A stretch of DNA of 61,582 nucleotides from Euprymna scolopes (taxonomy: Eukaryota), in NCBI GenBank assembly GCA_053919585.1, contig CM132783.1. One strand, 5' to 3'. This document shows, one piece after another, positions 55,720 to 56,450 of this stretch. A model generated the notes under the pieces. It saw only the letters and a list, made by a program, of their open reading frames with translations. It ran no database searches and was not told the origin of the DNA. A program made the translations under genes and the position numbers. Position 1 is the stretch's first letter. Each line of letters opens with the position of its first letter.

Positions 55720-56450
55720 TTTATTTGCTTCCTGAAAAAAGGGCTAAACTAGACATAAGGTTTGCATTTATTTAATGCGGGGAAGATGCATTCTGGATTG
55801 AAACAAATAGTTACTCTCTTTAGAAAAACATGCATATCAGTGACCGAGGGTAGAAAGAGGAATTTTAGTATCGGAACAGATACTACACTTTCTTCCTAGC
55901 CAGAAATTAAAACAAAAACTGAAATCAGGATACTTGTCGGTTTCCAACTATGAGTCAAATCTAATATATCCTTTTATTTATTTGCTTCCCCACCAAAGCA
56001 AATTAGGCACAAGGCCGTTTTTAATGTGGGGTAAAAACCAGCTCCCCTAAAAGTAGGCAAAAAGGGGGCACTCTGGTTACCAAAAATAATAATTGTCCCA
56101 GTATAGAGGGTTTCCCCTCCATTGACTGGTACAAATTATCTTAAATGCAGCATCTGGAGAACAGATACTACACTTTGATCCCGGTCCGAAGGCCAAGAAC
56201 AACAGGGTGTTTATTTGCTCCCCCACCGAGCAAATTAGGCATAAGAGACCAAAATTAATTAATGTGAGGAGTGAAGGGGAAATGGGGACCAACTCCCCGG
56301 AAAGTAGGGGAGCTGGATAATGAAATTGGTATGAAGGGTTGCCCCTACATTGACCAAGGTCTTATATGTGGGGTCGCCCCCACATATGGTCTTTGCTTGC
56401 AGTATCTGCCGGAACAGATACTACACTTTGATCAACAGAAAAAAGGCAAT
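55720..56450 (-). mobile_element. Tandem array of three U2 snRNA-headed units (~250-285 bp)
   Basis: GAACAGATACTACACTTT at 55874, 56159 and 56412; best head reads TTCTTGGCCTTCGGACCGGGATCAAAGTGTAGTATCTGTTCT (56199-56158); shared tail ..TGCCTAATTTGCT..GGTGGGGA(A)GCAAATAAA. Confidence 0.85.

What the first reader, a model, noticed from the sequence alone, without database searches (positions are those of the whole stretch)
55720..56450. U2 snRNA-headed SINE-like family, dispersed and in tandem
Six units (9397 fragment, 38745, 40205, three in tandem here) start with all or part of the first ~45 nt of U2 snRNA, including the branch-point recognition sequence GTAGTA; five end in a shared tail (..CCTTGTGCCTAATTTG..GGGGAGCAAATAAA-like). 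GTGTAGTATCTGTTC is much better conserved than the body. snRNA-derived SINEs are rare (SINEU of crocodilians), and U2 has no internal promoter, so how these are transcribed is open; tandem units suggest read-through or re-insertion next to earlier copies. An alternative is a non-autonomous derivative of U2-targeting LINEs (Keno, Utopia). Two copies lie in the large protocadherin intron, where U2-like or U2-complementary sequence might affect splicing.
Basis: partly seen in the sequence, partly recalled or inferred. Interest (0 to 1): 0.75.

Follow-up and report, generated by a model that had tools for sequence, protein, structure and literature searches.

The report
U2-headed SINE copies, cephalopod genome
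The repeats are real copies of a very abundant short retroposon of a cephalopod-like genome that starts with the first ~46 bases of U2 spliceosomal RNA, a type published only from crocodilians. Two of the three "tandem" units arrived together in one recent insertion.

Summary
Six units of one repeat family lie at the stated places.

- **U2 head.** Their 5' ends match U2 snRNA positions about 6-47 and nothing further (profile of 66 true U2 genes: unit B E=2.4e-7). The rest of the body is not U2.
- **Abundance.** Contigs of three related organisms pile onto units A and B at 10^4-10^5 times the flank depth.
- **Mobility.** Units A and B are flanked as a pair by a perfect 14-bp target-site duplication. 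They are missing from the matching locus of a related organism, which keeps unit C. So the "tandem of three" is one recent dimer insertion beside an old copy, and the U2 head travelled with the element.
- **Target site.** Elsewhere in the genome, tails of this family are often followed directly by ATCTGTTC plus body. That means insertion into the U2 head of an older copy, at the site published for the U2-homing LINEs Keno and Utopia.
- **Not shown.** I did not find the partner LINE of this genome, and the mode of transcription stays open. PolyA RNA reads cover both strands with no defined ends. There is no evidence of an effect on protocadherin splicing.

The scan has already reported this family many times on other pieces of this genome. 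I found no paper on it.

The parts
56206..56464 (-). Unit A (A-type subfamily). It runs from 31 nt of non-family 5' extension (56464-56434), through U2 nt ~25-46 (56433-56412), the inverted complement of the branch-point-recognition sequence, and a body with a ~26-nt palindrome (~56379-56354), to the tail hairpin ending GCAAATAAACACC.
   Evidence: Alignments of other copies break at 56433 (loose ends). Depth is 1.2-2.4 million against 16 in the flanks.
55973..56205 (-). Unit B (B-type subfamily). It has a full U2 head (nt ~1-46, 56204-56158), a 14-bp hairpin with the complement of the head, a body with an internal T5 run, and a tail hairpin ending GCAAATAAATAAA. Its first base abuts the tail of unit A.
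   Evidence: E=2.4e-7 against the true-U2 profile. Depth is 0.25-1.2 million.
56465..56478 (.). Upstream copy of the target-site duplication (ATCTAATATATCCT on the + strand) flanking the A+B dimer.
   Evidence: 15-mer with 1 mismatch, 14/14 exact core. Read directly.
55959..55972 (.). Downstream copy of the same 14-bp target-site duplication.
   Evidence: In organism C, one contig joins 55961 to 56527 with only 54 nt between, which is an empty site (table 8, record 17).
55716..55915 (-). Unit C, an older copy or rarer subfamily. It has a U2 head (nt ~15-46), a partial hairpin, and a tail ending GCAAATAAATTAA. It is present at the matching locus of organism C.
   Evidence: E=1.8e-5. Only its head bins show high depth and its body sits at single-copy depth. 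Organism C's contig aligns over 55746-55961.
40181..40397 (-). Unit D, an old copy in the sense orientation of the protocadherin gene. The head motif is exact, the tail is decayed, and no TSD can be found.
38726..38950 (+). Unit E, an old B-type copy antisense to the protocadherin gene. It has a full-length decayed head and a tail ending GCAAATAAA. No TSD can be found.
   Evidence: (69% identity to B over 225 nt).
9391..9565 (+). Unit F, a fragment. Its head is truncated at about U2 nt 33, the first half of the body is kept, and the 3' part is unlike the family.

Best explanation
These are copies of a non-autonomous, non-coding retroposon of about 230-245 bp that looks like a SINEU.

**Structure of a full unit**
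- It starts with U2 snRNA nt 1 to ~46: stem-loop I plus the branch-point recognition sequence.
- Next comes an inverted complement of that recognition sequence, so the RNA folds into a 12-14-bp hairpin.
- A structured body that is not U2 follows, in at least two or three subfamily versions.
- It ends in a 3' hairpin (TTTGCT..AGCAAA) followed by TAAA-type repeats, not polyA.

**How it moves**
- Shown: copies are made by target-primed reverse transcription, using a LINE's enzymes.
- Shown: units A and B went in together as one head-to-tail dimer at a site that is not U2. They made a 14-bp duplication, after the split from a related organism, and landed about 60 bp upstream of the older unit C.
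- Inferred: because the tail of A abuts the first base of B, the dimer most likely arose by a template switch from the 5' end of one SINE RNA to the 3' end of another, or by copying an existing dimer.
- Shown at family level: many copies sit inside the U2 head of older copies, between GTAGT and ATCTGTTC. This is the site used by the U2-homing LINEs Keno and Utopia.
- Inferred: the mobilising LINE therefore has Keno-type specificity. The U2 head is the upstream landing-site flank that such LINEs carry along. Each new SINE copy then supplies a fresh landing site, which explains the arrays.

**Transcription**
- This is not resolved. U2 has no internal promoter, and T5-T10 runs inside the units argue against Pol III.
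- The likeliest source is transcription from outside the element, either from a U2-type promoter at master copies or as host read-through.
For: - **U2 head.**: motif found 5 times against 0.12 expected; the true-U2 profile matches only positions 6-47, with B at E=2.4e-7. Rfam U2 gives 27.4 bits for B.
- **One family.** Searches recover the same six units.
- **Abundance and head-body linkage.**: 25,960, 10,531 and 24,368 contigs were laid in organisms A, B and C. Depth is 0.25-2.4 million over A and B against about 16-20 in the flanks, and it runs on across head and body.
- **Retroposition.**: a 14/14 TSD flanks A+B., table 8: organism C's 1,932-bp contig aligns to 55450-55961 and then to 56527-56680 with 54 nt between. 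About 59 nt are expected for an empty site with one TSD copy. The same contig still holds unit C.
- **Site-specific insertion.**: the joint 56419->56206 (tail ..AAATAAACACC | ATCTGTTCC..) appears in 10, 10 and 1 contigs and in 343 RNA reads. The loose-end consensus after the tail of A agrees with it.
- **Published site.** PMC4640811: the U2 flank downstream of Utopia starts at nt 39, and Keno has identical 3' flanks.
- **Keno-like LINEs elsewhere.** L131 lies inside a true U2 gene, with polyA followed by GTATCTGTTCTTATCAG. L128 has a TSD of U2 nt ~36-48. L047 has U2 nt 1-47, then an inverted complement of the recognition sequence, then ORF1 (zinc knuckle) and an APE endonuclease.
- **Hairpin.**: 87.5% of cells are paired against 21-51% when the partners are slid.
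- **RNA structure.**: z is about -6 for A and B.
Against: - I did not find the partner LINE of this genome. The window holds no LINE ORF, and homology fishing gave only LINEs of other organisms.
- None of the six copies in this window sits in a U2 head. The A+B target is not U2, and its likeness to the U2 site is a single case.
- C, D, E and F have no detectable TSD.
- The hairpin shows no compensatory double changes, because its 5' arm never varies. L128, a relative of L047, lacks the inverted complement.
- The depth sums from contigs are not a true copy number, as the tool itself warns.
- The polyA RNA data show both strands, no start or end pile-ups and no reads on the flanks. There is therefore no evidence of a transcript of the element's own.
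Confidence: 0.8

Rival explanations
1. The units are internally deleted, non-autonomous copies of a U2-homing LINE (a Bov-A-like "non-autonomous LINE"). On this reading the U2 head plus hairpin is the LINE's own 5' leader and the tail is its 3' UTR, so nothing was recruited from a small RNA as in a true SINE.
For: L047 is a Keno-like LINE copy in another invertebrate. It starts with U2 nt 1-47 followed by an inverted complement of the recognition sequence, the same layout as the SINE's 5' end. RNA reads show the same head and hairpin joined to a second, different body in 1,918 reads (loose end at 56146). Crocodilian Tx1-Mar LINEs carry U1 or U2 heads (PMC4494074).
Against: The cephalopod LINE was not seen here, so I could not test whether the body or tail is shared with it. 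L128 and L131, which are relatives of L047, lack the inverted complement. This reading differs from the best explanation mostly in naming.
Confidence: 0.3
2. The units are independent chimeric retrocopies. Each copy would have arisen on its own by a template switch from a LINE or other RNA onto U2 snRNA, as in U6/L1 chimeras, so there is no transposing family.
For: Template switching onto snRNAs is well known (reviewed in PMC4494074). The A-B junction in this window looks like a template switch.
Against: Tens of thousands of contigs share the same head-body junction and the same hairpin. The U2 part always ends at the same base, about nt 46. Subfamilies with thousands of pieces 95% or more alike point to master copies.
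Confidence: 0.03
3. The units are U2 snRNA variant genes or pseudogenes, or a local satellite array that grew by unequal crossing-over.
For: The three units lie head to tail. The Rfam U2 model gives weak full-length alignments.
Against: The Rfam scores of 27 and 20 bits are below the gathering score of 46. A profile of U2 nt 47 onward finds nothing in the window. A and B differ in their bodies. A TSD and an empty site show insertion. The copies are dispersed and hugely abundant.
Confidence: 0.02

Closest known systems
SINEU (SINEU-1/2/3) of crocodilians, Kojima 2015 (PMC4494074)
   Same: Both are short non-coding retroposons whose 5' end is copied from U2 (or U1) snRNA. Both lack a recognisable internal promoter and have internal oligo-T runs. 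Tandem copies are common in both, and both are linked to Tx1-clade LINEs that carry snRNA heads. How they are transcribed is unknown in both cases.
   Different: This host is a cephalopod-like mollusc, whereas the paper found SINEU only in crocodilians. Depth here suggests 10^4-10^5 copy equivalents, against about 10^3-10^4 copies there. The tail is a hairpin plus TAAA-type repeats, not polyA. The head is followed by its own inverted complement. The preferred target is the U2 head itself at the Keno site, not a Mariner transposon. Sequence relatedness to crocodilian SINEU was not tested.
Keno (Tx1 clade, APE endonuclease) and Utopia (restriction-like endonuclease), U2 gene-targeting LINEs (PMC4640811)
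   Same: The insertion point is the same. The U2 flank downstream of the element begins at nt 36-39 (..GTAGT|ATCTGTTC here; nt 39 in the paper; GTATCTGTTC in L128 and L131). Tandem insertion in U2 arrays has been reported for these LINEs.
   Different: The elements here are short and non-coding. They carry the target with them, so they land mostly in copies of themselves or at sites that are not U2, not in U2 genes. Molluscs are not among the hosts listed for Utopia in that paper. The LINE of this genome was not examined here.
R2 and other rDNA-specific LINEs co-transcribed with their target
   Same: A stretch of upstream target sequence at the RNA's 5' end can guide joining of the 5' junction. 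Transcription depends on the target's promoter. I offer this only as an analogy for how it may work.
   Different: The target (28S rRNA) and the enzyme are different. No ribozyme was found here. The analogy is inferred, not tested.
Ceph-SINEs and CORE-SINEs of cephalopods (Akasaki 2010, cited in PMC5786205)
   Same: They are abundant SINEs of the same animal group.
   Different: Those have tRNA-derived heads and RTE-type tails. The short Ceph/CORE motif quoted in PMC5786205 (CCTTGGGAAAG) does not occur in these units; the nearest stretch is CCTTGGTCAATG.

Membership tests
SINEU (snRNA-headed SINE, Kojima 2015) | The 5' region is derived from U1 or U2 snRNA. | tested here: met
   A profile of 66 true U2 genes matches U2 positions 6-47 of unit B at E=2.4e-7, C at 1.8e-5 and A at 3.1e-5. 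The motif count is 5 against 0.12 expected. Rfam U2 gives 27.4 bits.
SINEU (snRNA-headed SINE, Kojima 2015) | It is a short (<500 bp), non-coding unit present in many copies with the same head-body structure, not a set of independent chimeras. | tested here: met
   Units are 200-260 bp. Between 10,531 and 25,960 contigs were laid per organism, with unbroken depth across head and body.
SINEU (snRNA-headed SINE, Kojima 2015) | It shows the hallmarks of retroposition: a TSD and an empty orthologous site. | tested here: met
   A 14-bp TSD flanks A+B, and organism C has an empty site (record 17). No TSD was found for C, D, E or F.
SINEU (snRNA-headed SINE, Kojima 2015) | It has a 3' polyA tail (all crocodilian SINEU have one). 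| tested here: not met
   The units end in GCAAATAAA followed by TAAA or other short motifs, with no A-run.
SINEU (snRNA-headed SINE, Kojima 2015) | It is mobilised by a Tx1-clade LINE that shares its target preference or head. | tested here: inconclusive
   The target site matches Keno and Utopia. A Keno-like LINE of another organism, L047, shows the same head plus hairpin. The LINE of this genome was not found.
SINEU (snRNA-headed SINE, Kojima 2015) | It shares descent with the crocodilian SINEU sequences. | not tested
   No crocodilian SINEU sequence was at hand. Independent origin seems likely given the hosts, but that is inference.
Classical SINE (Pol III-transcribed) | The head holds an internal Pol III promoter, as in tRNA, 7SL or 5S heads. 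| tested here: not met
   The head is U2, whose promoter lies upstream of the gene (established knowledge; PMC4494074). T5-T10 runs inside B, D, E and F would stop Pol III.
Keno/Utopia-type U2 site specificity | The element's 3' end joins U2 sequence at a fixed base around nt 36-39. | tested here: met
   Met at family level only. The joint 56419->56206 and the loose ends after the tail of A read tail|ATCTGTTCC. None of the six copies in the window is such an insertion.
U2 snRNA gene (Rfam RF00004) | It reaches the gathering score of 46 bits and has stem-loops IIa to IV and an Sm site. | tested here: not met
   The best score is 27.4 bits. A profile of U2 nt 47 onward finds nothing.

The most novel reading that the evidence does not exclude
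The short element carries, as its own head, the landing site of the U2-homing LINE that moves it. Every insertion anywhere in the genome would then plant a new target, freeing a strictly site-specific LINE from its few U2 genes and building head-to-tail arrays. The head and its complement also form a hairpin that contains both a copy of U2's branch-point reader and a perfect branch-point-like partner for it. Tens of thousands of intronic copies could therefore, in principle, interfere with branch-site choice.
Probability: 0.5. Interest if true: 0.75.

Novelty: new variant of a known kind. Interest (0 to 1): 0.6.

Why it matters
**Where it stands in the literature.** Within the searchable library, snRNA-headed SINEs are described only from crocodilians. 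Their origin and transcription are open questions there (PMC4494074). This genome has such a family outside vertebrates, at very high copy number and with young copies.

**What it suggests.** The family's junctions tie the U2 head to the known landing site of U2-homing LINEs. That points to a concrete origin for such heads: the target flank carried along by the LINE. It would also answer a puzzle raised for Keno and Utopia, namely how a LINE that aims at a low-copy gene can thrive (PMC4640811).

**For this locus.** The outcome is ordinary. It holds one recent dimer insertion beside an old copy, upstream of a protocadherin exon, with no sign of function.

Tried and rejected
1. **Is the whole unit a degenerate U2?** A loose pairwise alignment hinted at a stem-loop IIb-like hairpin and an Sm-like ATTTTTGG. 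A profile of U2 nt 47 onward then found nothing in the window, so I rejected this.
2. **Is the extra A in GATCAAAGTG specific to the family?** No. A metagenome scan showed the same spelling in about 95 true U2 genes of assorted eukaryotes.
3. **Copies of the family in metagenome contigs.** None was found. All hits matched only the head.
4. **Partner LINE.**
   - The window has no LINE ORF.
   - Word searches with the endonuclease of L047 and the reverse transcriptase of L128 gave many unlabelled LINEs.
   - I fetched contigs for six of the hits. P0018, P0058 and P0149 are not U2-linked and carry no copy of the SINE. P0003's contig, L129, showed no U2 sequence either.
   - P0004 (L128) and P0101 (L131) are U2-homing LINEs of other organisms.
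5. **TSDs of C, D, E and F.** None was found.
6. **Covariation in the head hairpin.** There are no double changes. Six of the eight changes in the 3' arm keep pairing through G-U, which is not significant given the arm's base make-up. A-to-I editing before retroposition as the source of the A>G changes remains a guess.
7. **Satellite or unequal crossing-over, DNA transposon or MITE.** Rejected because of the 14-bp TSD, the absence of terminal inverted repeats and the empty site.
8. **Literature.** I found no paper on U2-headed SINEs in molluscs.

Full report
**What is there**

The region 55716-56478 holds three head-to-tail units on the minus strand.
- The 15-mer GTGTAGTATCTGTTC, which is U2's branch-point recognition region, occurs four times exactly and once with one mismatch in the window. 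Shuffles give 0.12.
- A profile built from the aligned units recovers exactly six copies and nothing else above noise. They are A 56450-56206, B 56197-55973, C 55912-55716 and D 40397-40181 on the minus strand, and E 38737-38954 and F 9358-9565 on the plus strand.

**Is the head really U2, and how much of the unit is U2?**

- At Rfam's curated threshold the window has no U2 hit, only a 5S-like hit.
- In E-value mode the U2 model gives 27.4 bits (E=0.0024) for B and 20.5 bits for A, below the gathering score of 46. Only the first ~47 model positions align well.
- I built a profile from 66 distinct true U2 genes. These turned up in a metagenome scan for the head motif. The profile matches U2 positions 6-47 in B (E=2.4e-7), 15-46 in C (1.8e-5), 25-46 in A (3.1e-5) and 28-47 in D (0.027).
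- The same profile cut to U2 nt 47 onward finds nothing.
- So the head is U2 nt 1 to ~46 and the body is not U2. A loose alignment that hinted at an Sm-like site does not survive this test.

**Anatomy of a unit**

- Directly after the head comes an inverted complement of GTGTAGTATCTG. The RNA would fold into a 12-14-bp hairpin that hides the U2 recognition sequence.
- In the five copies that have heads, 87.5% of cells pair, against 21-51% when the partners are slid. The 5' arm never varies, so there is no compensatory change.
- Whole units A and B fold far better than shuffles, with z about -6.
- The tail is a hairpin (TTTGCT..AGCAAA) followed by TAAA-type motifs. It contains AATAAA and is not polyA.
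- Internal T5-T10 runs in B, D, E and F speak against Pol III.

**Abundance and linkage**

I laid contigs of three organisms on 55450-56700 at 82% likeness. Organism A matches the flanks with 0-2 differences, so I take it to be the window's own species. Organisms B and C are relatives.
- 25,960, 10,531 and 24,368 contigs were laid.
- Summed depth over A and B is 0.25-2.4 million against 16-20 in the flanks. The tool warns that this is not a copy number, so I read it only as 10^4-10^5 copy equivalents.
- Thousands of pieces are 95% or more like A or B, so these two are young copies.
- Only the head of unit C attracts depth and its body is at single-copy level. C is therefore old or belongs to a rare subfamily.
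- Loose ends show that the same head and hairpin are also joined to a different body (1,918 RNA reads at 56146). One head serves several bodies.

**Proof of insertion, and what the "tandem" is**

- A perfect 14-bp direct repeat (ATCTAATATATCCT on the + strand) lies at 55959-55972 and 56465-56478. It flanks A and B together.
- One 1,932-bp contig of organism C aligns to 55450-55695 and 55746-55961, then jumps to 56527-56680 with 54 nt between. About 59 nt are expected for an empty site with one repeat copy (table 8). That contig still contains unit C.
- A and B thus entered as one 492-bp insertion, after the split from organism C, at a site that is not U2. They brought their U2 heads with them and landed about 60 bp upstream of an older copy.
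- The tail of A abuts the first base of B's full head. A itself begins at about U2 nt 25, behind 31 nt that match no other copy (loose end at 56433).
- I infer a template switch from the 5' end of one SINE RNA to the 3' end of another during reverse transcription, or the copying of an existing dimer. Kojima proposed the same kind of 5' addition for crocodilian SINEU (PMC4494074).

**Where the family prefers to land**

- The best-supported back-joint (56419->56206) appears in 10, 10 and 1 contigs of the three organisms and in 343 RNA reads. It reads tail ..GCAAATAAACACC followed directly by ATCTGTTCC and body.
- The loose-end consensus after the tail of A says the same.
- This is the footprint of a copy inserted into the U2 head of an older copy, between GTAGT and ATCTGTTC.
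- The published U2-homing LINEs use this spot. The U2 flank downstream of Utopia starts at nt 39, and Keno's 3' flanks are identical (PMC4640811).
- Other joints show tails followed by full or truncated heads, as in A-B.

**Independent look at U2-homing LINEs**

Three contigs from other, unnamed organisms helped.
- L131 is a complete LINE with an APE endonuclease and reverse transcriptase inside a true U2 gene. Its polyA is followed by GTATCTGTTCTTATCAG.
- L128 is a 51%-identical relative with a duplication of U2 nt ~36-48.
- In L047, U2 nt 1-47 is followed by a 9-bp inverted complement of the recognition sequence. Then come an ORF1 with a zinc knuckle and an endonuclease ORF.
- L047 therefore has the same 5' layout as the SINE. 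L128 and L131 lack the inverted complement, so it is not universal.
- These contigs support the idea that the head is the upstream target flank of such a LINE, extended to nt ~46 by the target duplication. They are not from this genome.

**What I could not show**

- The window has no LINE ORF. My attempts to reach the partner LINE of this genome failed. Earlier notes of this scan claim such a LINE exists, but I did not verify that.
- PolyA RNA reads of organism A cover A and B on both strands at similar depth, and 84% of them run on into unlike sequence. There are no start or end pile-ups and no reads on the flanks. This fits passive transcription of many copies and says nothing about small transcripts.
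- The cadherin exon at 46085-48835(-) is real, and D (sense) and E (antisense) lie downstream of it. There is no evidence of any effect on splicing.

**Comparison and novelty**

- The nearest described kind is SINEU of crocodilians, which the paper found nowhere else (PMC4494074).
- This family shares the U2 head, the missing promoter, the oligo-T runs, the tandem habit and the tie to Tx1/Keno-type LINEs.
- It differs in host, abundance, tail (not polyA), the head hairpin, and its target, which is its own U2 head at the Keno site as opposed to a Mariner transposon.
- I found no paper on such elements in molluscs.
- The scan has reported this family many times on other pieces of the same genome. 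This window adds a clean dated dimer insertion.

Noticed in passing
window 8603-8719 (-): A 5S rRNA-like sequence scores 73 bits over the full model length. It lies between (CA)n/(TA)n microsatellite runs, its 5' end merges into a TA repeat, and no T-run terminator follows it directly. It could be a 5S pseudogene or a 5S-headed (SINE3-like) element. It lies about 640 bp from unit F.
   Followed up: partly
window ~56354-56379 (inside unit A): A perfect palindrome of about 26 nt (CCATATGTGGGG..CCCCACATATGG). It belongs to the abundant A-type subfamily, with depth of 1.8-2.0 million, and is absent from B-type units.
   Followed up: partly
window 56146 (loose ends): In polyA RNA, 1,918 reads carry the same U2 head and hairpin and then continue into a different body (consensus agreement 0.88). 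This is either another subfamily or the 5' region of the partner LINE.
   Followed up: no
L131:1-5438 (NCBI GCA_037932185.1 contig); L128:560-6200: These are complete Keno-like LINEs with an APE endonuclease and reverse transcriptase, sitting in U2 sequence of unnamed organisms. L131 interrupts a true U2 gene. Its 5' junction comes after nt 30 and its 3' junction is polyA|GTATCTGTTC.
   Followed up: partly
L047:672-760: A U2 gene start (nt 1-47) is followed by a 9-bp inverted complement of the branch-point recognition sequence and then by a LINE ORF1 and ORF2. This is the same 5' layout as the cephalopod SINE, found in a metagenome contig of another host.
   Followed up: partly
L010, L085, L096, L092, L110 (metagenome contigs): In these contigs a U2 head is followed by sequence that is not U2, starting at nt ~47-52. 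They may hold other U2-targeting elements in other eukaryotes.
   Followed up: no
window 46085-48835 (-): A 916-aa open reading frame with six cadherin repeats and an N-terminal Cadherin_2 domain. It is a protocadherin ectodomain exon. The A-B-C array lies about 7 kb upstream of its start, on the same strand.
   Followed up: partly
window 55959-55975 and 56462-56478: The non-U2 target of the A+B insertion (TTTAGGATATATTAG) shares 8 of 11 bases with the U2 site TAGTATCTGTT. Relaxed recognition of U2-like sites has been reported for crocodilian Utopia. This is a single case in AT-rich DNA, so it may be chance.
   Followed up: no
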